Source: Epithemia pelagica
Lineage: Eukaryota; Protista; Bacillariophyta
DNA: 64,000 nucleotides
Reading direction: 5' to 3'
Assembly (NCBI GenBank): GCA_946965045.2
Contig: OX337229.1
Coordinates: 1,426,001 to 1,490,000, forward strand
The position numbers and the translations under genes are program-made. Within the stretch, counting starts at the first letter, position 1. Every line of letters starts with the position of its first letter. The notes under the pieces were generated by a model, which did not search any database, was not told the DNA's origin, and saw only the letters and a program-made list of their open reading frames with translations. Shown piece by piece: positions 33,387-43,177 of the stretch.

Positions 33387-34583
33387 CTACACAATGACAT
33401 TCTCTAACTTGAGCCTCAGCACTTGGTCTGCCGAAAGCTGCACATCGTATCGACCAGATTCGCGATTCCAAGATTTAATGGTTCCAAGTCGCCCATTCAA
33501 TTCTGGTTTAGAAAGAAGTCCAATAATATGGCCCACAGTCCCATTCTCTAGAACCACATTGGCCGGTTTGAGACTGACCACTTTGGACAGGTCCATGATG
33601 TAAATGCTGTATCTTTCTTTATGTCCATTCCACGAAATAACAGTCCCTTTCCTCCCATTCAGATCAGGTTGACTTTCTATACCTTGAAGCACGACATGAA
33701 CATGTTGCAGTAAATTCGATGGTTTGACTCGCAGTTGCTCATCTCCATCCTCTAGCATAATTGTGTATCTTCCAGACTGAGGATCGTACCCGATAATCTC
33801 TCCTCGATCTCCATTTCGTTCTGGTTTGCTCACCAACCCTTTCAGAGAAACAATTGTTCCATTTGGAATGGCATCATATCGTTTACGAGCCGGTCTTTGA
33901 CTGGCGAATGGTGAAGACGCTGATCCTCCCGGAAAACCACCCATGCTTCCACCCGGCATTCCACCCATGCTTCCACCAGGCATTCCACCTCCAAACATCA
34001 TGAATGGATCCATGCCACCACTGGGTCCTCCACCCATATTGAAAGAAATGTTTGGTGTACCACCTCGCTGTCGCCTGCCGCCTCCGAAACTGGAACCGAA
34101 AGGATCAGCTCCTCCGAAAATATGTGAAAACAATAAATCGGCCTCTTCCTGACTCATATGCATTCCTCCTCCAGGACCTCCTCTTGAAAAATTCATTCCT
34201 GGTCCTCCCGCACCTGGGAAATGGGAAGCCCCATTCTCCCCCATTTGATCAGCATGGTCGACACCATCTTTCCCGTATTGATCATATATCTTCCGCTTCT
34301 TAGGGTCTGACAGTGTTGCGTACGCTTCTGATATTTTTTGGAAATTTTTTGTTGCCTCTTCGCTGTCGGGATTCTTATCCGGATGCCACTGAAATAAAAT
34401 AACAACAACAACAAGACGAGGATGAGACAATGTACAACAAATGGCGAATCCGAGCGACGTACTTATGCATTGACCCACCTTCACAGCAAGTTTCCGATAT
34501 GCTTTCTTCAGCTCATCATCACTCGCATTTCGCGGACATCCAAGTATTTGATAGTATTCATCTGATTGCAAGTTTGGCGGCAT
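33387..34583 (-). CDS. DnaJ/Hsp40 J-domain protein; one intron
   Basis: YYQILG...[19 protein letters not shown]-rich linker, and three C-terminal GLxSKPxxNG repeats. Confidence 0.92.
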
Positions 34584-34655
34584 TGTCTCCTCTATCGTGT
34601 TTTCGGTTTCGTGTTTTTAAGTTTTTTTGTGGTCTAGAATAGGTTATGGGTGTGA

Positions 34656-37600
34656 CTAAACTAGATCTGGGGTGGGGTGGTCATGTACGGAGTAGGCGAT
34701 GTGTGGGTTGAATGGGTGGGGGAAGTAACGGGTGGCGGGACAGACGGTGAAAACGGAGGATTTTTGGATCCTACTCAATTTTCGTTGCTGCGCAAGATGG
34801 AGGTCAGTGGTGGACAGGGCATCAAGGATATGTTGGGCCAAGGCCGTGGTTATCGCATGACCGAGCGAAAGAGAGGCATGGCGAGTCAGAGTCTGTTGTA
34901 ATGGGGACGGGGTTGGGTGCGAGCGAGTCTGCGCTTGGTGGAGGAGGTTCGAGGGGCCAAACTGGAGAATGTTGTTGTATGCCAAAAAACCATCGGGGTG
35001 GGGAAGGCAGCGGTCGGAGCGTCCGAGTTGGGGTGTGAGCCAAGGAGGAGGAAGGGAAGGAGAGAGGGAGTGCCATGGGGGCGGGCCAAAGAAGAAATTG
35101 TGGGCAAAATGGCCGAGACCGCCGAGGTGATCGATGGAAAAGGGTAGGAGTAACAAGTTGTTGGTGTTGATGAGCGCGGTGGTGGTGGTGTCATGAGTAA
35201 ATTTGTGTCGAGCGGCGTGATGGTGAATCTGGGATGCAGCAGTGGCAATTGTGTCGAACGATTGACCATAACGGATTTGCTCTTGGGAAGGGGCGGTTGG
35301 TGGGAGATGGGGGTGAGCGGGAGGAACGGTGATATCAATGGCAAGGTACCGGAAGCGGTTGTCGGGAAGGGGCGGATGTAAGGCGATGCCTATGTCTGCG
35401 GGGCGGATGTTGCGTGGGTGGTGAGGGAGGAGGTTGGTAGGCTCCATGTGGACGTCGGAGGTAGTGCGTGTCCATTCGGCTCGTGGGGCCAGCTCTTGAG
35501 CAAGAAAAAACACGGCGTCGCGGAGTTTATTGGAGAGTTTGGTTTTGTGGTGCTTTTGGCACGAGAAGAAATGGTCGCCGTAGGGGTCAAGGCGTGGGTG
35601 GGAGGCGCAGAAGCAGTGAGAGGGGAAGTGGAGGGGAAGGAAGGGGAGGCGGAGCTTACGAGCGATAGCGATTTCAAAAAGAGAATTGGGAATGCGAAAA
35701 TGATTGAGGAACCGTGGTTGATGGAGGGGGTCGCTGGTAAGTCGGGAAAGCGCCGAAGGGAGTGAGCTGTGTAATTCGGGCGGGGTAGAAGCAACAATCA
35801 AAGGGAGCAGGTGTGTCTCCTGGTTGGAAATGACGAGGTGCCGTTGTGCGTCGTCGGGGTAGGATTCGAAGTCGGTGACTCGGAAATGAAGAACGTGTGG
35901 GAAAAGCGAAGCAAAATGTGAGTGAAGGTCGGCGAGCGAGCGATGGGTTGGAGTTTGGTGGGATGGTGTTGGCGGACCTGGTGGTGGCGGGGAAAAGATG
36001 CTGGTATGGGCTTTAGGGAAGTGGTCGTTGTTGGCGAGGCGGAGGGACCGTCCCAGGGAATTGAGGAGAGACGGGACGGCGGTGGTACGATGGCAAGGAT
36101 ATCCGAGGCCACCAAGGGCCGACGAAAGATTGGCGATGTAAAGGGAGTGGTCGGGCACTTGTTGTGTGTGGGTGAGGTGTCGGAGGAAGGATCGGGTGAT
36201 GGCGTCCAGGCGTGGGGAGAGGAAGTGTTGCCAAATAGTGGAGGTGGGTGGGGTGTTGGAGCGGTGGCGAAGAAGAAGGAGTATATCGGCGGCGAGCAGG
36301 TGGGTTATTTTTGGAAGGATGCAGGTACGGAAGAGGATGGATTTCGTTTGCGAGTTATTGAGTGCGCGGAGAGCCACAGCCGATTGTTCAATGTTGTCGA
36401 GTTTGGACGTGAGAAAGTCTTTGATAAAGTTGTCGTGGCCGATGGGATGGCCAAGAAACCTGGTCCCGGAGGTGATTTCGGCGTCGGAGGGGTTGAGGGG
36501 GTTGAGAAACGAAAGGGCCGATTGGAGGTGGTTGCGGTTGGCGGGGGAAAGGACGTTGGTCGGGCTGGTGCCGTTTGTGGACGACAGGATGCGGGTTTTT
36601 TGTTTATTGAGGTGTATTCCGAGAGGTTTGCCGAGTGTTTCTATTTGCTGGAGAAATGGGAGCAAGTCTTCGTGGAGAAGACAGACGGACGTGTCGTCCA
36701 TGACACTGGCCGTGTGGGCGAGACCGCCGAGGTTGTCGTCGCATGGGAGATGGCGGCGGATGCGTTCGAGGGCACGTGTTGAGAGTGTTCTGTTGATGGT
36801 GGCGGTAAGTGTGGCGAGAACGAGACAGGCAAATAACGGACTCAGAGGGCATCCCTGACTGAAACCTTCTGGTTGGTTAAGAGTTTTGTGGTTTCCCTCG
36901 TGATCTTGGTACCAGTTGTTGGTGTCGGAGGCGTAGAGGAGGTCGAAAAGGGCAACGAGTGGTTTGGTGTCGTCGTTGTTGTGGAGTATTTCGCGGCATC
37001 TTGTTCTGGAACAGGCATTGAACATATTGGTCAAGTCTAAGAGGACGAGGGCGCGTGAGGGTGGTGAGTCGTTGGTGGTGGTTGTGATGTATCTGTCAAT
37101 TTGTTGTTGTGTGAGGTGGGCGGTGAAGTCTACGCCGCCACTTGTGTTTATGCCGTATTGTCCTTGTTGAGTTAGCAGGGGTTCGATGTCGTGGCAGGTG
37201 TGAGTGAGGGCTATGGTGGCTGCTGTGCGTCGAAGTGCTGTCCCGATTCCGATGGGTCGCAGTTTGTCGAGATTAGCCATATCTTTGTGCAAGGCGAAGA
37301 AATGGATGGACGAGAAAAGGGGGCGGATAGGAGGCGGTATTTGGTTGTTGAGAATTGCGGTGAACAGCGTTTTCAGGTTGTGGAAGTAGGGCCGATCGGA
37401 TGACGGGTGGGTTGTAGAGCGTTGTAGGCCGAGGGCCCTTAGGCTGTCGATGGACGCGGAAAAGGGACCTGGGGCGGTGCCCTGACTGAGGCGGTGCAGA
37501 GCTTTCTCGAGGGTGTTGTCCGAGATGGAAGTGTGGTGGTTGGGTGTGTAGCTATGGTTGCGGAGGTGGTGTGGTGGGTCGATTCGGGGCGGGTAGAGCG

Positions 37601-38513
37601 TGGAAGAAACGATGGCGATCCGTTCGGGGGTTAATGTGGCAATCGGCATTGTTGCGGTGAGGCGGTTGTGGGCGGCGCGGAGGTTTCCGAGGTCCGCTGC
37701 TTGCTGGGCGAAAGAGGCCATTGTTGTTGGTGTTGGCGCCGTTGGTGTTGTGTTGTGTTGGCGTTGTTTGTGCTTGTTGGTTCGTGTTGGGGTGGGTTTT
37801 GGTGTTGGGGATGGGTGCCATACGTTGTGGTAAAGTAGGATCAAATCGCCCTGTTTGAGTTGCGCGACTCTGTGTTTGAGGGCGTTGTGGTGTGTTCGGT
37901 GGTGGGTGTGTTTGATGGGAGCTAGAAGCAGTGCTTCAAGAATCAGTAAAAGTTTCCAGAAAGGGACGCTGTCGGTGTTGTGTTTTGGATATGGGGAGGT
38001 GGTGTGGTTGTCGGCCAAGGGGAGGGAGGCTTGGTTGGTCCAGTCGACTACCATGTTTAGTGTTTGGAGGAAGAGGCGTTTTGCCTGGGGCTTGAGACGT
38101 GTGAACGAAGAGCGTCGGAAGGGCGGCGGTGTGAGGTCAAGGTTGTAGAGGAAGGCCAGTTGGTCCAACCATTGCTGGGTTTGGGTGGGGGAGAGGTGGC
38201 GGAGTGTGGTCTGGACGATGTTGATGTTGGTGGTGTGGCGGCAGTGACTTCGATTGGTGTGGGCTTGGAGGTGGCGTGGTGTGAGGTAAATTGCGGCCGG
38301 GTCGTTGCAAAATCGGCATGGGTGGAGGTTGTGTTGTTGACAAAATCGGTCAGTGAGGTGGGTGGTTGGGAGGTCTGGGTGTGTCTGTTGAATGTGGAGT
38401 CGGAGTTCGTCGGTAGTTTGTCGCGGGGTTTGGGAGGGAGTGGAGTGCCATGAGCAGGTGGGGTAGGGGCAAGTGGTGGGGGTTGGTTGGGGCGTTCTTT
38501 GGAGACTACACAT
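34656..38513 (-). CDS. Retrotransposon ORF2: 2x C2H2 finger, reverse transcriptase, CCHC, restriction-like endonuclease
   Basis: CPYPTC..HIQQTH and CRFC..HTNRSH fingers. RT motifs TAPGP, KLRPIGIG, LLDLTNMFN, GFSQGCPLSP, VMDD, LNKQKT, FLGHPIG. Then CFC..GDHFFSC and RPAD..AIDITV. Confidence 0.92.
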   Translation of the reverse strand: MCSLQRTPQPTPTTCPYPTCSWHSTPSQTPRQTTDELRLHIQQTHPDLPTTHLTDRFCQQHNLHPCRFCNDPAAIYLTPRHLQAHTNRSHCRHTTNINIVQTTLRHLSPTQTQQWLDQLAFLYNLDLTPPPFRRSSFTRLKPQAKRLFLQTLNMVVDWTNQASLPLADNHTTSPYPKHNTDSVPFWKLLLILEALLLAPIKHTHHRTHHNALKHRVAQLKQGDLILLYHNVWHPSPTPKPTPTRTNKHKQRQHNTTPTAPTPTTMASFAQQAADLGNLRAAHNRLTATMPIATLTPERIAIVSSTLYPPRIDPPHHLRNHSYTPNHHTSISDNTLEKALHRLSQGTAPGPFSASIDSLRALGLQRSTTHPSSDRPYFHNLKTLFTAILNNQIPPPIRPLFSSIHFFALHKDMANLDKLRPIGIGTALRRTAATIALTHTCHDIEPLLTQQGQYGINTSGGVDFTAHLTQQQIDRYITTTTNDSPPSRALVLLDLTNMFNACSRTRCREILHNNDDTKPLVALFDLLYASDTNNWYQDHEGNHKTLNQPEGFSQGCPLSPLFACLVLATLTATINRTLSTRALERIRRHLPCDDNLGGLAHTASVMDDTSVCLLHEDLLPFLQQIETLGKPLGIHLNKQKTRILSSTNGTSPTNVLSPANRNHLQSALSFLNPLNPSDAEITSGTRFLGHPIGHDNFIKDFLTSKLDNIEQSAVALRALNNSQTKSILFRTCILPKITHLLAADILLLLRHRSNTPPTSTIWQHFLSPRLDAITRSFLRHLTHTQQVPDHSLYIANLSSALGGLGYPCHRTTAVPSLLNSLGRSLRLANNDHFPKAHTSIFSPPPPGPPTPSHQTPTHRSLADLHSHFASLFPHVLHFRVTDFESYPDDAQRHLVISNQETHLLPLIVASTPPELHSSLPSALSRLTSDPLHQPRFLNHFRIPNSLFEIAIARKLRLPFLPLHFPSHCFCASHPRLDPYGDHFFSCQKHHKTKLSNKLRDAVFFLAQELAPRAEWTRTTSDVHMEPTNLLPHHPRNIRPADIGIALHPPLPDNRFRYLAIDITVPPAHPHLPPTAPSQEQIRYGQSFDTIATAASQIHHHAARHKFTHDTTTTALINTNNLLLLPFSIDHLGGLGHFAHNFFFGPPPWHSLSPSLPPPWLTPQLGRSDRCLPHPDGFLAYNNILQFGPSNLLHQAQTRSHPTPSPLQQTLTRHASLSLGHAITTALAQHILDALSTTDLHLAQQRKLSRIQKSSVFTVCPATRYFPHPFNPHIAYSVHDHPTPDLV

Positions 38514-41500
38514 TGTGTACGGGTTCCCCGTGGGGGCTGGAGTCAGTGGGGTTTTGGTCGATATCCATGTCGGTGGCGGTGTTGTTGTTGTGGGTGTTTG
38601 TGGGGCCGTTGATGAAAGTGGTGGTTGGGTCGTTGATTAGGTCGTGGGCGAACTGCCAAATGGTTTTGGCATCCGTGGTGTTGAACGAGGTGAGTTGGTT
38701 GGTGAGTTGGTTGGCGAATGTGGGAAGGAGGGTTGGGTTGTTGGTGCGGATGTAGTCGTCTAGAAGGTCTAACTCGTGTGTTGTGTCTTGGGAGAAGGAG
38801 AAGTGGTTTGTGGGGATGAGGTGTAGGAGGTGGTCGGGGGGGCGGTTGTGTTTATCGGTGCGGTCGTTGTCGGTGGGGGTGTTGTTGGCGGTGTTGTTGT
38901 TGTGGTGATGGGTGAGAAGGTTTGTATCGGGGGGCGGTGTGGAACGTGGGTCGGTGGTGTTGGTGGGGTGGTTGTCCTCGTCGTCTTCTTCCGCGAGGGC
39001 GGCGAAGGAGTTGGATTGCAGTGGTGTTGGTGGTTTGTCGACGGCGGACGGAACGGGGGCGTCATGTGGGGAAGCGGGACGTTTGCGTGTTTGTGGATGG
39101 TCATCGTTGTTGTTGTTGTCGTGTTCGTGTTCGTTGTTGTGGGAGTTATTGTCGTGTTCGTGTTCGTTGTCGTGGAAGGGTTCAGTGTCTGGTGATGGGG
39201 ACGGTGAAGGGGTAGTGAGGTCGACGTAGTTGTGGATGGGGTTGAAGCGGTTGGCAAGTTCGGCGAGTCGTTTTGTGCGTTGGATTGTGGTGGAACGGTG
39301 TGGTGATGGTGTTGGCGGTTTCGCGGCTATGGTCGCGGAGGTTGTGGTGAGGAGGTTGCTGGGGAAGGCGGCGAGTTTTTGTTGAATGTTGGTGGGGTTG
39401 ACATGGATGGTTCCTAGGTTGCAGTGGAGGAAGAGGTGGTGACTTTCCGGGGACGGGTTGTGGGCCGAGAATTGCGGGAATATGCCTCGGTAGTCTTTGA
39501 GGTGGTAGAGTGCGTCCCAGTCGTCTTGGGTGGCGTGTGGGTTGAGGTTGTGCAGACGGACGACGGTGTAGGTGGAGAAGTTTTGGTCGATGGTTTTGAG
39601 ACTGTTGACGTACGCGGTGCGTTCAACTGGGTTTTCCGGGAAGGGGAGGAGTTGGAATGGGACGTTGTGGTAGGAGAGGTCTTGTTTATTGGCGGCCGTG
39701 AAAGCTTCCGTGGCGTCGAGGAGGGTTTCGAATTTTTCTGTTGAGGAGGCGGAGATGATGAGGGTAGGTAAGGTGAGATGGGGGCCCTTGGGCGATTGGT
39801 TGCCCGTGATGGTTCCATCACGGAGGCCGATGTGAGTGGTGAAGTCTTCGGTTAGATGGAGGTCGGCGGGGAGGAAGGGAAGGAGTTGTTTGCGGACGGT
39901 CGCGAGTACGTCAAGGAAGGCACGTTTGTGGTACAGGGTTTTGGGGGGGAGGCCAGCTAGGATTCCGAGGCCGCGGCAGTCGGTGTGGTTGCACGCAGGT
40001 GCATAGAGGCGGAGTTGGGGGGCGCGTTCGTTGGTGGTGGGTTGGGATTCGTGGGTGCCAGGGGGGAGGATGTCGCGGAGTCCGGTAGTGGGGTCTGTGG
40101 TGAAATCGGACTGGTGGTGGTGATTCCATTTCTGGAGGATGAATTTGCGAGCTTGTTCGTGGAACAGCTCGGGATCAAATTGGTCGTCGGTGACCGCCGG
40201 TTGGAGTTTGACTTGGAAGGTGGATACGTGGCCGCGGGGTGGGGAGTTTGTGGTGCCGCGTCTGGGCGGGGAAGGTACCTTGGTGTTTTGGTAGGTGACT
40301 TCGTGGACGGCGAGGAGGATGATGGTTTCGCGGGGCTTGTGGTGTTCTAACGTTGCTTCGATGATGTCTTTGATGGTGGTGCCGCTGAGGGGAGGGAGTC
40401 GTTGTTCGCGCTGGGGGTCGGGGTCATGGTGAATGTATGCATTCCAAATGATCATGTCGGTGGGGGTGTCGGTGGAGTGGTTGGTGTTGAGGTACGAATA
40501 CGGACTGGTGGGGGGGGTGTATGGTTTCTTGGCATGTTTCGGTGTTTTGTATGGGTTAGTGGAGGGAGGGCTGGTGGATTTCGGTGTTTTGGATGGGTTG
40601 GGGGAAGGAGGGTTGGTGGGAACGCCGGCTGGAGTGGGCGTGGGGACGGCGGGCGGAGTAGGTGTGGTGGTGGTGGGCGGGGTCGTAGGGGTGGGAGCAC
40701 GATGGAGGTGTGGTGGGGATTCGGGTTGAGGTTTGGGCTTGGACTTGGCGAGCAGGGTCTTGTTGAAGTGGTCGAATGCGGTGGGCTTGGGCTTGTTTTT
40801 CTTGTTTTTGTTTTTGTTGGGAAGGGGCGTGAGAGTGGAGATGGGGATGTGGTGGGGTCCTTGGTGAGGGGGACGGTTGTGGCGGGCAGGTGGCGGGGCC
40901 ATGGTCAAACTTGTTGAGGCTTGGAGCACTTTTGGTAGTTGTGTAATGATTAGGACGCTTTTTGGACAAAACTGATTTTGTGAGAGCAGGAGCCGGGAGA
41001 GCGAATGGGCGCGGTTGGGGGTAGACGGTGGTTGGTAGGTGTTGGGGGAAAAGCTACGGCGGGGGTTTACTGTGGTGGTGTCAGTGGGGAAGGTGTCAAG
41101 GGCGGATGGTTGGGTGTCAGTTGGCATCGGACGTGGCGGGAGAATGGTGGGTAGGGCCTGGGGAGTGTGTAGTTTTGCCGTGGAGTGGGGGTTGCAGCTG
41201 GTCGGGTGATGTCTATGTCGCCGGTTTGGTGTCGTCGGTTGTTGAAGTTGGTGGTTGGGGCATTTGGTTGGTGTCTGACGGTTGGGGGTAGATGGTGGTT
41301 GGTAGGTGTTGGGGGAGAAGAGACGGCGGGGGTTGACTGTGGTGGTGTCAGTAGGGAGGGTGTCAAGGGCGGATGGTTGGGTGTCAGTTGGCATCGGACG
41401 TGGTAGGAGGATGGTGGGTAGGGCCTGGGGAGTGTGTAATTTTGCCGTGGGGTTGGGGTTGCAGCTGGTCGGGTGGTGTCTATGTCGCCGGTTTGGTGTC

Positions 41501-42033
41501 ATCGGGTGTTGAAGTTGGTGGTTTGGGCATTTGGTTGGTGTCTGGTTATGGATAGGGGAGCAGCTGGTAGGGACGCGTGGTGGGGGGAGTGTGTCGGAGG
41601 GACAGGAGGTAGGGAAAAGTGGGCAGTTGGTTGTGTCAAGTTTTCCGGTGCAACTGCAGGTTGGGTGGGTGCAAGTGCAGGTGGGTGGGGGGATCTGGCG
41701 TGGGCGGTAGTGGTGGAGTTGGGCCGGATGGCGTCTGGGGGGTGGGGGGACGGGAGTTTGGTTGGGTGTTGTGTGGTTGGGTGTCGGGGACCATGGTGGG
41801 TTGGGGCGAGAGCAGAAAGCGGAATGAGGGACTGCCGGGGGAGGACGAATGTCGCGGGTGGGACAAGGGTGGTGTGGAGGGAGACGACCGGAGGAGGTGG
41901 GGGAGCCGGAGGGAGGAGGTACCGGGCGATGTGGGGATGGGGATGCCGTGCTGGGGCCTGGGCGGGCCGGAAGTGCCTGTGGGTCGAGCTGGGAACGCTG
42001 GAACGGCGGCTTCCGGGGCCGATGCACTCTCAT
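38506..42033 (-). CDS. Retrotransposon ORF1, unknown function (Pro/Thr/His-rich termini, globular core)
   Basis: 1175-codon uninterrupted ORF overlapping the ORF2 start by 8 nt. A downstream start such as MAPPPAR is also possible. Confidence 0.75.
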   Translation of the reverse strand: MRVHRPRKPPFQRSQLDPQALPARPGPSTASPSPHRPVPPPSGSPTSSGRLPPHHPCPTRDIRPPPAVPHSAFCSRPNPPWSPTPNHTTPNQTPVPPPPRRHPAQLHHYRPRQIPPPTCTCTHPTCSCTGKLDTTNCPLFPTSCPSDTLPPPRVPTSCSPIHNQTPTKCPNHQLQHPMTPNRRHRHHPTSCNPNPTAKLHTPQALPTILLPRPMPTDTQPSALDTLPTDTTTVNPRRLFSPNTYQPPSTPNRQTPTKCPNHQLQQPTTPNRRHRHHPTSCNPHSTAKLHTPQALPTILPPRPMPTDTQPSALDTFPTDTTTVNPRRSFSPNTYQPPSTPNRAHSLSRLLLSQNQFCPKSVLIITQLPKVLQASTSLTMAPPPARHNRPPHQGPHHIPISTLTPLPNKNKNKKNKPKPTAFDHFNKTLLAKSKPKPQPESPPHLHRAPTPTTPPTTTTPTPPAVPTPTPAGVPTNPPSPNPSKTPKSTSPPSTNPYKTPKHAKKPYTPPTSPYSYLNTNHSTDTPTDMIIWNAYIHHDPDPQREQRLPPLSGTTIKDIIEATLEHHKPRETIILLAVHEVTYQNTKVPSPPRRGTTNSPPRGHVSTFQVKLQPAVTDDQFDPELFHEQARKFILQKWNHHHQSDFTTDPTTGLRDILPPGTHESQPTTNERAPQLRLYAPACNHTDCRGLGILAGLPPKTLYHKRAFLDVLATVRKQLLPFLPADLHLTEDFTTHIGLRDGTITGNQSPKGPHLTLPTLIISASSTEKFETLLDATEAFTAANKQDLSYHNVPFQLLPFPENPVERTAYVNSLKTIDQNFSTYTVVRLHNLNPHATQDDWDALYHLKDYRGIFPQFSAHNPSPESHHLFLHCNLGTIHVNPTNIQQKLAAFPSNLLTTTSATIAAKPPTPSPHRSTTIQRTKRLAELANRFNPIHNYVDLTTPSPSPSPDTEPFHDNEHEHDNNSHNNEHEHDNNNNDDHPQTRKRPASPHDAPVPSAVDKPPTPLQSNSFAALAEEDDEDNHPTNTTDPRSTPPPDTNLLTHHHNNNTANNTPTDNDRTDKHNRPPDHLLHLIPTNHFSFSQDTTHELDLLDDYIRTNNPTLLPTFANQLTNQLTSFNTTDAKTIWQFAHDLINDPTTTFINGPTNTHNNNTATDMDIDQNPTDSSPHGEPVHNV
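41012..41544. repeat. 267-bp (89-codon) tandem duplication inside ORF1
   Basis: CATTTGGTTGGTGTCTG at 41261 and 41528. The peptide TPTKCPNHQL...QPPSTPNR occurs twice. Confidence 0.92.
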
Positions 42034-42427
42034 CGTGGCTACCAGGGTCCGACAGAGTGGTTAGGGAGGATAAGGTCTCGCTTGTTCGATTTAGTTACGT
42101 CTTTGTCTTTCGGTTTTCAAAACTTTTGTCCATTTTGTTTTTGGAGCGAAAAGTGTGGAAGCAGTACGGATGTCATTTGTTCCAGTCCCCCAGTCCCGAA
42201 AGGCCTTGGAGATGGAGTTGTGCTGGGTGCGGGACTGAGCCATCCTGTCGTGCGCACAAAAGCGGAGGAGAAGTTCCACGTGGAGCGTCACCGGAAACCA
42301 ACACCAACCGTATTTCACTGTCACCCATCAACACTCCACTCCCACACCCACCCACGAAGAATCTGTCAAGGACCAAGAACACAGCGACACCAACGAACTC
42401 ATACACATTGAACGAAGTATCAATCCC

Positions 42428-43177
42428 ATGATCTCTTTTACTGTTACCATCTCATGTGTTTGCTTGCTCGTATTTATATCGCCTGTCGAGTGCTTTCTCC
42501 AGCAGATGCTGTACCCTATCTCTTTGACCCCGACGCAAAATCCCCAATCCCAAGAGATTATGGACCGCACACACAAAGCCTCGCGTGTGGCTGACGAGCC
42601 AATGCTGTTCGATGACAATATTCTGAACGATATGCAATCAGCTTTACTCAAACTCGAACGGAGAGTACAGGAAGGACCAGGTTCTCTGTCAATTTTGGAC
42701 GTCGAAGAACTCAGTGGAGAAATGTCACGAATCATGAAAGAAATGCATCAGAATCCTCATAGGAGAGCTTTGCGTCCGAGCGAGCGCGATGCAAGTGATA
42801 GCAATCCGTCAACTCTTCAAAATCCTCCAAAGCCACTTGAAAGTGTTCAAAGCGAGCCGAAACGTACTGTTATCGACACGTCGAACGATGAAGGACCCGC
42901 CTATGATGGAACAGGCGGCATGGGTCAGCCACAAGGAACTGTGAATACCTATGTGATTGAGGGGATGGATGGAATGTCCCCCGAGGAATATCAAAAGGCA
43001 CTGCAAGATTCAATAATCGAGCGACAAAGAAAAAGAAGGGCTTCTGGGACTACTGGCAATCGGGCCACATGGGACTACCTTACATCTCTTGGTGGAAGCA
43101 CTGGTGTCATAAAGACTGATGAAGATTCAAAAGCCGATCAAGACGATGACAATAAGAAAGACTTCAAACCCTTCTGA
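42428..43177 (+). CDS. Hypothetical protein with signal peptide plus F (plastid-type leader)
   Basis: Leader MISFTVTISCVCLLVFISPVEC-F. Contains YVIEGMDGMSPEEYQKALQ. Confidence 0.7.
   Translation: MISFTVTISCVCLLVFISPVECFLQQMLYPISLTPTQNPQSQEIMDRTHKASRVADEPMLFDDNILNDMQSALLKLERRVQEGPGSLSILDVEELSGEMSRIMKEMHQNPHRRALRPSERDASDSNPSTLQNPPKPLESVQSEPKRTVIDTSNDEGPAYDGTGGMGQPQGTVNTYVIEGMDGMSPEEYQKALQDSIIERQRKRRASGTTGNRATWDYLTSLGGSTGVIKTDEDSKADQDDDNKKDFKPF

What the first reader, a model, noticed from the sequence alone, without database searches (positions are those of the whole stretch)
34610..42107. Intact two-ORF CRE-clade retrotransposon outside a canonical CRE target
Seen: two long uninterrupted ORFs (1175 and 1285 aa); ORF2 has two C2H2 fingers, RT, a CCHC motif and a PD-(D/E)xK-type RLE, with no APE domain. 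Known: characterised CRE-clade elements are typically site-specific (CRE1/SLACS/CZAR in spliced-leader RNA genes; MoTeR and Cnl1 at telomeric repeats). Here no SL, snRNA, rRNA or telomere array flanks the element, and it sits between two divergent protein genes. Inference: a recent, possibly active diatom CRE lineage with an undescribed target preference or relaxed specificity.
Basis: partly seen in the sequence, partly recalled or inferred. Interest (0 to 1): 0.78.

Follow-up and report, generated by a model that had tools for sequence, protein, structure and literature searches.

The report
Diatom jumping gene targeting gene starts
This is an intact, recently inserted R2-like (restriction-endonuclease type) LINE retrotransposon, present on only one of the diatom's two chromosome copies. 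It and its many relatives here insert not at random but a few dozen bases upstream of the start codons of ordinary protein genes, in the gene's orientation, a target habit I know of in no other LINE and did not find in the held papers.

Summary
Observation confirmed. A 7,510-bp insertion (window 34627-42136, minus strand) carries two intact overlapping ORFs of 1175 and 1285 aa. ORF2 has two C2H2 fingers, a reverse transcriptase, a CCHC knuckle and an R2-type restriction-like endonuclease (fold Z 14.4 to solved R2). No APE domain was found. ORF1 holds RRM-like domains whose best fold match is human L1 ORF1p.

The other haplotype of the same individual has the empty site. It shows a 6-bp AAAAAC duplication 37 nt upstream of the ATG of a DnaJ gene, in the gene's orientation. 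The insertion is therefore hemizygous and recent.

The family is large here: at least 86 places, and several subfamilies with 97-100% identical copies. No SL, rRNA or telomere target exists, and all flanks differ.

Insertion is not random. Four of five empty-site-verified insertions lie 9-37 nt upstream of a same-strand ATG-ORF (p about 1e-5). Half of 36 copies have such an ORF within 250 nt (18.5% expected, p 2e-5).

CRE-clade membership could not be tested because no named references were retrievable. A Repbase "Ambal"/CRE-like identity is plausible but untested. Host-promoter hijack is inferred, not shown: element RNA is nearly absent.

First readers of this scan flagged the same family in at least seven other places in this genome; none noted the gene-start pattern.

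The parts
34627..42136 (-). Whole inserted DNA (7,510 bp), absent from the other haplotype
   Evidence: L057 (empty allele) matches window 45000-42137 and 34626-32001 at 99.8%. L058 (filled allele) is 100% identical to window 44583-32001.
42137..42142 (-). 5' copy of the 6-bp target duplication or microhomology AAAAAC
   Evidence: The two flank matches to the empty allele overlap by 6 nt.
34621..34626 (-). 3' copy of AAAAAC. Its A-run cannot be told apart from the element's A tail.
   Evidence: Contigs of the DNA and RNA runs break exactly at 34626, as expected at an allele branch.
42110..42136 (-). 27 copy-specific nucleotides at the 5' junction (AAAATGGACAAAAGTTTTGAAAACCGA), of unknown origin
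   Evidence: They are absent from the empty allele and from the 98.5% sister copy L021, whose homology starts at 42109. They are unique in the genome.
42034..42109 (-). 5' UTR, with a motif shared across subfamilies (GTCGG..CCTGGTAGCC..ATGAGAGTGCACCGGCC)
38506..42033 (-). ORF1, 1175 aa: a low-complexity Pro/Thr/His-rich N-terminal half, a conserved folded centre and a conserved C-terminal helix
   Evidence: No Pfam family.
41012..41544 (-). 267-bp x 2 tandem duplication inside the variable N-terminal part of ORF1
   Evidence: 93% matches. Also seen as self-matches.
39331..40464 (-). Conserved ORF1 domain (aa 524-901), predicted as about three ferredoxin/RRM-like units
   Evidence: Alignments A6 and A7. 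Model pLDDT 90.7, pTM 0.87. Only 54 representatives among 1.84 billion proteins.
39634..39981 (-). RRM-like unit of ORF1 (aa 685-800). Its best fold match is the central domain of human LINE-1 ORF1p.
   Evidence: Unbiased search of 48,161 chains: 2w7a_B Z 8.4 (97 of 99 residues aligned), 2ldy Z 7.8, 2yko Z 7.6; other RRMs Z 5-6. This Z is borderline by the tool's own note.
38506..38513 (-). 8-nt ORF1/ORF2 overlap ATGTGTAG: the ORF2 start codon lies 5 nt before the ORF1 stop
   Evidence: The ATGNNTRR pattern is kept in all six other copies examined, across subfamilies whose ORF2s are only about 40% identical.
34656..38513 (-). ORF2, 1285 aa
38244..38468 (-). Two N-terminal C2H2-type zinc fingers (aa 16-40 and 66-90)
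   Evidence: Conserved Cys and His columns in alignment A1.
36414..37286 (-). Reverse transcriptase core (aa about 410-700), with catalytic MDD in place of YxDD
   Evidence: RVT_1 28.6 bits. Invariant motifs. Family profile against solved R2 E 1e-11 and against L1 ORF2p E 1e-8.
35559..35615 (-). CCHC zinc knuckle (C967, C969, H981, C985)
   Evidence: Invariant columns. Aligned to the R2 zinc knuckle and RLE region.
35124..35546 (-). Restriction-like (PD-(D/E)xK) endonuclease
   Evidence: Invariant E1024, D1040 (in RPAD), D1060 (in AIDIT) and K1104. Fold Z 14.4-11.3 to the R2 C-terminal region; type II restriction enzymes and Prp8 rank below.
34627..34655 (-). Very short 3' UTR and A tail. The terminal ...TCACACCCATAACCTATTCTAG is nearly invariant among copies that are only 70-80% identical overall.
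33387..34583 (-). Host DnaJ gene. Its ATG lies 37 nt downstream of the target duplication, and its 90-nt intron (34389-34478) is spliced in RNA.
   Evidence: Pfam DnaJ E 5e-24. The splice joint has GT..AG ends in runs X4 and X5.

Best explanation
This is a young and probably still active autonomous non-LTR retrotransposon of the restriction-like-endonuclease (R2-like) type. It belongs to a large, diversified family that is so far known mainly from diatoms.

ORF1 encodes an RNA-binding protein with RRM-like units resembling L1 ORF1p. ORF2 is probably translated by termination-reinitiation at the conserved ATGNNTRR overlap. It supplies zinc-finger DNA binding, reverse transcriptase and the endonuclease.

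Insertion is by target-primed reverse transcription. The bottom strand is nicked at a short T-run (an A-run on the sense strand). The A-rich 3' end of the RNA pairs with it, and a staggered second nick leaves a 2-8 bp duplication.

Shown: the family has no repeated-gene target. It does land preferentially 9-150 nt upstream of the start codon of ordinary protein-coding genes, on the gene's strand. For DnaJ the insertion point lies within the transcribed leader.

Inferred: this position is chosen by something beyond the A-run, such as open or transcribing promoter-proximal DNA. It could let the element use host Pol II promoters, as R2 uses rDNA and CRE/SLACS use spliced-leader genes.
For: Architecture and folds.

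Hemizygous insertion with an exact empty site and an AAAAAC duplication 37 nt from the DnaJ ATG.

Sister copy at 98.5% identity at another locus (L021). Run variants match it at 36 of 39 sites, with half-depth bubbles.

Family size and youth:
- At least 86 places.
- Full-length copies 97-99% identical.
- One pair 100% identical over 7.2 kb.

Four more hemizygous insertions with empty sites in the other haplotype:
- L053: duplication AAAGAG, 9 nt to the ATG.
- L056: duplication AAAC, 28 nt to the ATG.
- L022: A-run, 37 nt to the dUTPase ATG.
- L054: 2 nt, no ORF.

Statistics:
- 4 of 5 lie within 45 nt of a same-strand ORF of at least 150 aa. Expected 3.7% for intergenic positions and 5.8% for intergenic A-runs (p 9e-6 and 5e-5).
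- 18 of 36 junctions have such an ORF within 250 nt of the ORF2 stop, against 18.5% for intergenic-only positions (p 2e-5).
- 12 of 30 have an ORF of at least 200 aa, against 7% (p 4e-7).
- The longest downstream ORF is on the sense strand in 28 of 36 (p 0.001).

The downstream ORFs are real and unrelated host genes: DnaJ, Kelch, peroxidase, UbiA, aldo-keto reductase, DUF819, dUTPase, nitrite/sulfite reductase, ABC ATPase and WD40.

The DnaJ mRNA contig reaches the insertion point, so the site is transcribed.
Against: - Gene detection was crude: ATG-ORFs plus Pfam, with no annotation.
- The null came from a single 64-kb window.
- A-runs are themselves 2-3 fold enriched upstream of ORF starts (13.6-22% against 7%). 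Part of the bias may therefore be simple sequence preference.
- Among Pfam-recognisable nearest genes the tally is 10 sense to 5 antisense. A sizeable minority of copies lie elsewhere, for example in the 3' flank of a convergent gene.
- Host-promoter hijack is not supported by the one RNA data set. Element body depth is 0-4 against 270 for DnaJ.
- The copy-specific 5' extensions (7-86 nt) found no source elsewhere in the haploid assembly.
- No 5' ribozyme was found.
Confidence: 0.7

Rival explanations
1. Insertion has relaxed specificity. The endonuclease and priming step only need a short A-run, as L1 does at TTTT/AA. The gene-start pattern arises because A-runs are commonest in diatom 5' leaders and because insertions elsewhere are purged.
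For: All five empty sites have an A-rich duplication or microhomology. AAAAA sites are 2-3 fold enriched upstream of ORF starts on the same strand. Five Pfam-verified antisense neighbours exist.
Against: Intergenic A-run sites predict 5.8% within 45 nt, but 4 of 5 were observed (p 5e-5). All A-run sites predict 14-22% within 250 nt, against 40-50% observed. The hemizygous insertions, including a copy with a 100% identical twin, have had little time for purging and show the pattern most strongly. A 7.5-kb insertion in a 5' leader is not an obviously harmless place.
Confidence: 0.2
2. It is a canonical site-specific CRE-clade element whose repeated target (spliced-leader gene, telomere repeat, snRNA or tRNA gene) was overlooked.
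For: The domain architecture is the one shared by CRE, SLACS and CZAR.
Against: Thirteen aligned 3' junctions of this subfamily and all 36 junctions in total have unrelated flanks. The five empty sites share no sequence beyond an A-run. Rfam finds no RNA gene around the element.
Confidence: 0.02
3. The position upstream of genes is maintained by the host. The element's conserved 3' terminus acts as a promoter or transcription start for the downstream gene, so such copies are tolerated or even useful and accumulate.
For: The last 32 nt or so are nearly invariant among copies that are 70-80% identical overall. RNA contigs cover the last 38 nt or so of family copies but not the body (record 18; depth 0 beyond 34679).
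Against: The RNA contig may come from a short 5'-truncated fragment lying inside a normal leader. Contigs cannot show transcript starts. Conservation of a 3' end is what RT recognition alone would give. Recent hemizygous insertions already show the pattern, which points to targeting rather than retention.
Confidence: 0.08

Closest known systems
R2 (28S rDNA-specific RLE LINE; solved structures 9nl2, 9dou, 8gh6)
   Same: N-terminal zinc fingers, RT, CCHC knuckle and C-terminal PD-(D/E)xK endonuclease, with no APE. Best sequence match (E 1e-11) and best fold match (Z 14.4). A short 3' UTR that is strongly conserved. Inserted in the sense orientation inside a transcribed host unit.
   Different: R2 has a single ORF, a Myb domain, one fixed 28S target and a 5' ribozyme. 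This element has a large RRM-type ORF1, no Rfam ribozyme hit and thousands of potential targets defined by position, not by sequence.
CRE clade (CRE1/2, SLACS, CZAR; MoTeR, Cnl1), from my own knowledge of the literature
   Same: C2H2 fingers, RT, CCHC and RLE. SLACS and CZAR also have an ORF1. They sit in the sense orientation inside the DNA that specifies the 5' leader of mRNAs (spliced-leader exons). The diatom family does the same thing directly at protein genes.
   Different: CRE members are sequence-specific for one repeated target; this family is not. Phylogenetic membership is untested here.
Ambal (Repbase clade; RepeatMasker label LINE/CRE-Ambal)
   Same: The label is applied to abundant LINEs of a diatom genome (PMC12803021). 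'CRE-Ambal' exists as a class label (PMC11572971). T. pseudonana holds a 30%-identical relative (P0040).
   Different: No Ambal sequence or description could be retrieved; the defining paper, PMC2829327, is not held. Identity with Ambal is therefore a guess. I know of no published target preference for Ambal.
LINE-1
   Same: Two ORFs. The ORF1 RRM fold is the best match (Z 8.4). Priming is at a T-run with an A-rich 3' end, duplications are short, and 5'-truncated copies exist.
   Different: L1 uses an APE endonuclease, has its own internal promoter, and shows no gene-start preference.
Position-specific (not sequence-specific) retroelements: Dictyostelium TRE5/TRE3 near tRNA genes, Ty3 at Pol III starts, S. 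pombe Tf1 in Pol II promoters (own knowledge)
   Same: The target is defined by a position relative to a transcription unit rather than by a DNA sequence.
   Different: Those elements target Pol III genes, or (Tf1, an LTR element with an integrase) promoters without strand bias. Here an RLE LINE sits at Pol II protein genes, tens of nt from the ATG, with strand bias.

Membership tests
RLE-type (R2-like) non-LTR retrotransposons | LINE-type reverse transcriptase | tested here: met
   RVT_1 28.6 bits. All RT motifs are invariant in 19 members. The family profile hits R2 at E 1e-11 and L1 ORF2p at E 1e-8.
RLE-type (R2-like) non-LTR retrotransposons | CCHC knuckle followed by a C-terminal PD-(D/E)xK endonuclease, with no APE domain | tested here: met
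   Invariant C967, C969, H981, C985, D1040, D1060 and K1104. Fold Z 14.4-11.3 to the R2 C-terminal region. No Exo_endo_phos hit.
RLE-type (R2-like) non-LTR retrotransposons | TPRT footprints: no LTRs, a defined 3' end, a variable 5' end, short target duplications | tested here: met
   Empty and filled alleles compared. 3' ends in register and 5'-truncated copies.
CRE clade | RT groups with CRE1/2, SLACS and CZAR in a phylogeny | not testable with these tools
   No named CRE, NeSL or Ambal sequences came back from two word-seeded searches. They are not in the PDB. The Atlas gave no names.
CRE clade | Sequence-specific insertion into a repeated target (SL RNA genes or telomeric repeats) | tested here: not met
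   All flanks are unrelated. The five empty sites share only an A-run.
CRE clade | N-terminal C2H2 fingers plus RT, CCHC and RLE, with an optional ORF1 | tested here: met
Ambal clade (Repbase) | RT similarity to Ambal reference elements | not testable with these tools
   Reference sequences and the defining paper are not available. Only the label's use for diatom LINEs was seen.
L1-type ORF1p | RRM central domain | tested here: inconclusive
   The top three of 48,161 chains are human ORF1p (Z 8.4, 7.8, 7.6). By the tool's note Z about 8 is borderline, there is no sequence similarity, and no coiled coil was examined.

The most novel reading that the evidence does not exclude
The diatom family may be a 'leader-targeting' LINE lineage. 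It would recognise the promoter-proximal, transcribed 5' leader of Pol II protein genes by a transcription- or chromatin-linked cue, with an A-run for priming. It would insert in sense, and so would borrow host promoters instead of carrying one. That would make it the protein-gene counterpart of the spliced-leader-targeting CRE/SLACS/CZAR and NeSL elements. It would also suggest that 'insert into the 5' end of a Pol II transcript' is an old strategy of early-branching RLE LINEs. The copy-specific 7-86 nt at the 5' junctions would then be transduced pieces of the source gene's leader.
Probability: 0.3. Interest if true: 0.85.

Novelty: new variant of a known kind. Interest (0 to 1): 0.72.

Why it matters
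RLE LINEs are the textbook site-specific retrotransposons, and R2 is now being engineered for gene insertion. This lineage keeps the R2-type machinery but picks its target by position (just upstream of start codons, strand-specific) rather than by a fixed sequence. That would be a new mode of LINE targeting.

It would also be a natural system for asking how an RLE/zinc-finger module reads a chromatin or transcription cue.

For diatom biology, it is a currently mobile family: all six insertions compared between the haplotypes are on one only, and one copy has a 100% identical twin. It lands in the leaders of housekeeping genes, so it is a likely source of allele-specific expression differences and regulatory variation in clonal diploid populations.

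Tried and rejected
- 5' ribozyme or other RNA family: an Rfam scan of 34000-42700 at E up to 5 found nothing.
- Named CRE, NeSL or Ambal references for an RT tree were not obtained. Two word-seeded searches returned only unnamed diatom and metagenome relatives plus T. pseudonana. The Atlas gave unnamed RVT_1 clusters. The literature search found only the labels. The RTclass1 paper is not held.
- Metagenome scan for more flanks: the first alignment was too diverse. The second gave 166 pattern matches but no relative.
- 5' transduction test: the 27-nt and 38-nt junction strings have no second copy in the haploid assembly. Only 32 nt of L021's 86-nt string match elsewhere. The idea is neither supported nor refuted.
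- A TSD guessed from the shared AAACCGAAA near both ends was rejected once the empty allele gave AAAAAC.
- Empty-site look-ups through two further host proteins failed because no exact product is on record. The same happened for P0040.
- I considered reading RNA contig record 18 as proof of a start site inside the element. I dropped this, because it may be a truncated fragment within a normal leader.
- Read laying was kept to 5,901 letters.


Full report

On the minus strand there are two uninterrupted ORFs, 38506..42033 (1175 aa) and 34656..38513 (1285 aa). The region stands out by composition. The sense strand is 44% C and 13% G, at all three codon positions, while the flanks are unskewed. 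This drives the Pro/Thr/His-rich proteins. An A+C-rich, G+T-poor sense strand is shared by the other subfamilies.

**ORF2 is an RLE-type LINE polyprotein**

Pfam gives only a sub-threshold RVT_1 hit and no APE domain. An alignment of 19 relatives shows two N-terminal C2H2-type fingers, all RT motifs (catalytic MDD), a CCHC knuckle, and invariant E1024, D1040, D1060 and K1104. A family profile hits solved R2 proteins at E 1e-11 and L1 ORF2p at E 1e-8.

An AlphaFold model of the C-terminal 324 aa (pLDDT 84) matches the zinc-knuckle and endonuclease part of R2 at Z 14.4-11.3. The next folds are Prp8 and viral cap-snatching nucleases at 6.6 or less, with restriction enzymes at about 3.

**ORF1 was unexplained by sequence**

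There was no Pfam match, and only 54 representatives among 1.84 billion proteins. Its N-terminal half is low-complexity and variable, with a 267-bp tandem duplication. Residues 524-901 are conserved and fold confidently (pLDDT 90.7) into about three ferredoxin/RRM-like units.

In an unbiased comparison with 48,161 chains, the top three matches are the human LINE-1 ORF1p RRM (Z 8.4, 7.8, 7.6), with other RRMs below. The Z is borderline but the context fits: ORF1 is most likely the element's RNA-binding protein. The two ORFs overlap by 8 nt in a conserved ATGNNTRR arrangement in every subfamily looked at. That suggests termination-reinitiation (inference).

**The exact insertion and its age**

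The ENA assembly ERZ21939226 turned out to be diploid contigs of the same individual. One contig (L058) is 100% identical to the window over 12.6 kb. The other (L057) is 99.8% identical in both flanks but lacks the element.

The empty site reads ...TTTTCGCTCC AAAAAC TTAAAAAC...(37 nt)...ATG of a DnaJ gene. The filled allele has AAAAAC on both sides of 7,510 inserted bases (34627-42136). The insertion is thus hemizygous, in the sense orientation, 37 nt upstream of the start codon.

The first 27 inserted bases are copy-specific and unique in the genome. Homology to a 98.5%-identical sister copy at another locus (L021, itself on one haplotype only) starts at 42109 and ends at 34622. Contigs of public runs of the same organism break exactly at 34626. 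They carry variants that match the sister copy at 36 of 39 sites, with half-depth bubbles. This fits two hemizygous copies.

**RNA evidence**

One run (X4) is RNA. It shows the DnaJ intron (34389-34478, GT..AG) spliced, and the DnaJ contig (depth 270) reaches the insertion point. The element body has depth 0-4. A few read-length contigs are identical to the window copy rather than to the sister copy. So the site is in the transcribed leader, and the element is at most weakly expressed in that sample.

**The family**

DNA search finds about 12 copies of this subfamily at 66-80% identity, and no second near-identical copy in the haploid assembly. The C-terminal 514 aa of ORF2 finds at least 86 places, many with open frames of 1300 aa or more. 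Other subfamilies have full-length copies 97-99% identical, and one pair is 100% identical over 7.2 kb.

Relatives occur in Thalassiosira pseudonana, in another Thalassiosira and in marine metagenomes. First readers of this scan flagged the same kind of element in at least seven other places in this genome.

**Target**

3' ends are in register. The terminal 32 nt or so are almost invariant, followed by a short A-rich tail, and the flanks beyond are all different. So there is no repeated target.

In most copies, however, a long ATG-ORF on the same strand begins 35-150 nt after the ORF2 stop. These ORFs are unrelated host genes: DnaJ, Kelch, peroxidase, UbiA, aldo-keto reductase, DUF819 and dUTPase. 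Where the first exon is short, nitrite/sulfite reductase, an ABC ATPase and a WD40 protein were also found.

Counts against a null from the element-free window:
- 12 of 30 copies have an ORF of at least 200 aa starting within 250 nt, against 7% expected (p 4e-7).
- 18 of 36 have an ORF of at least 150 aa, against 18.5% when the null is restricted to positions outside long ORFs (p 2e-5).
- The longest downstream ORF is on the sense strand in 28 of 36 (p 0.001).

**Independent evidence from haplotype comparison**

The strongest evidence is that four further insertions on ERZ contigs are absent from the scaffolded haplotype, which gives their empty sites:

| Locus | Duplication | Distance to ATG | Downstream ORF |
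|---|---|---|---|
| Window (empty allele L057) | AAAAAC | 37 nt | DnaJ |
| L053 | AAAGAG | 9 nt | 167 aa |
| L056 | AAAC (8 or fewer) | 28 nt | 224 aa |
| L022 | A-run | 37 nt | dUTPase |
| L054 | 2 nt | none | no ORF |

With the window copy, 4 of 5 recent insertions lie within 45 nt of a same-strand start. Random intergenic positions give 3.7%, and intergenic A-runs give 5.8% (p 9e-6 and 5e-5). Because these insertions are recent, the pattern reflects where the element lands rather than long-term survival.

**Limits**

- A-runs are themselves enriched upstream of ORFs (13.6-22% against 7%), so part of the bias is sequence preference.
- Five copies have a Pfam-verified antisense (convergent) neighbour.
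- The null comes from one window, and gene calls are ORF-based.
- I could not fetch the remaining 43 or so junctions.

**Mechanism**

Shown:
- RLE-LINE machinery.
- A-run microhomology and short duplications, typical of TPRT.
- Sense insertion in or next to 5' leaders.
- Copy-specific 7-86 nt at the 5' junctions.

Inferred:
- A promoter-proximal cue beyond the A-run.
- Use of host promoters. Against this second point, element RNA is nearly absent next to a well-expressed DnaJ. No ribozyme was found. The 5' strings have no identifiable source.

**Classification**

It works like R2 and CRE-type elements. Membership of the CRE clade could not be tested, because no named references were retrievable. 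The clade's usual hallmark, one repeated sequence-specific target, is not met.

The Repbase clade 'Ambal' (RepeatMasker label CRE-Ambal) is used for abundant diatom LINEs and may be this family. That is a lead, not a result.

**Verdict**

The element is real, intact, hemizygous, and a member of a large active family. The interesting part is not the single copy but the family's positional, strand-specific preference for the leaders of protein-coding genes. I did not find this described in the held papers.

Noticed in passing
window 34627-42136 (sense = minus strand); also L053, L054, L056: Extreme strand asymmetry of the whole family. The sense strand is 42-47% C and 12-14% G in this subfamily, and A+C-rich (A 0.32, C 0.34, G 0.18, T 0.13-0.18) in the others, at all codon positions. 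Host genes are unskewed. The cause is unknown; mutational bias during reverse transcription, avoidance of G-rich RNA structure, or something else.
   Followed up: partly
L021:12694-14309 (nested in the sister copy): A 1.6-kb insertion with a 6-bp overlap at its ends interrupts ORF2 of the sister copy. Copies 97-99% identical lie at G000 C8:1203959, C16:1053412 and C11:2713190. About 200 bp matches in both orientations, which suggests a young non-autonomous DNA transposon with inverted ends.
   Followed up: no
G000 C3:3417230-3421964 versus L021:6311-15510: At the sister copy's locus the scaffolded haplotype is not empty. It holds 4.7 kb of unrelated sequence, ending against the same 3' flank position after an A-run. 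This may be a different element at the same site. It could not be fetched.
   Followed up: no
L022:3500-5772: A 2.27-kb repeat lies next to the L022 element. It has many 97-99% copies (C10:388109, C5:2827803, C8:1563195 and others), and its last 280 bp occurs alone at at least a dozen places. This looks like an LTR element with solo LTRs.
   Followed up: no
L022 5' flank / G000 C3:1745288-1745764: A 476-bp presence/absence difference between the two haplotypes just upstream of the L022 insertion site.
   Followed up: no
L022:6409-6426 versus L022:13897-13916: The target just upstream of the L022 insertion (TTCCAGAAGACATGAAAAA) resembles the element's own 3' end (TTCTAGAACACACAAAAA) over about 18 nt. 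Either chance, or a hint that the RNA 3' end pairs with the target over more than the A-run.
   Followed up: no
window 34305-34617: A 2017 marine metatranscriptome (X5) holds a spliced contig of the DnaJ 5' end that is identical to the window, so this organism or a very close relative was in that sample.
   Followed up: no
3' ends of subfamilies (L035-L051): Different subfamilies share a YTAGA motif 10-17 nt before a TAAAATAAAAA-type tail, which contains AATAAA. This subfamily ends in CTAGACCAC plus A7 without it.
   Followed up: no
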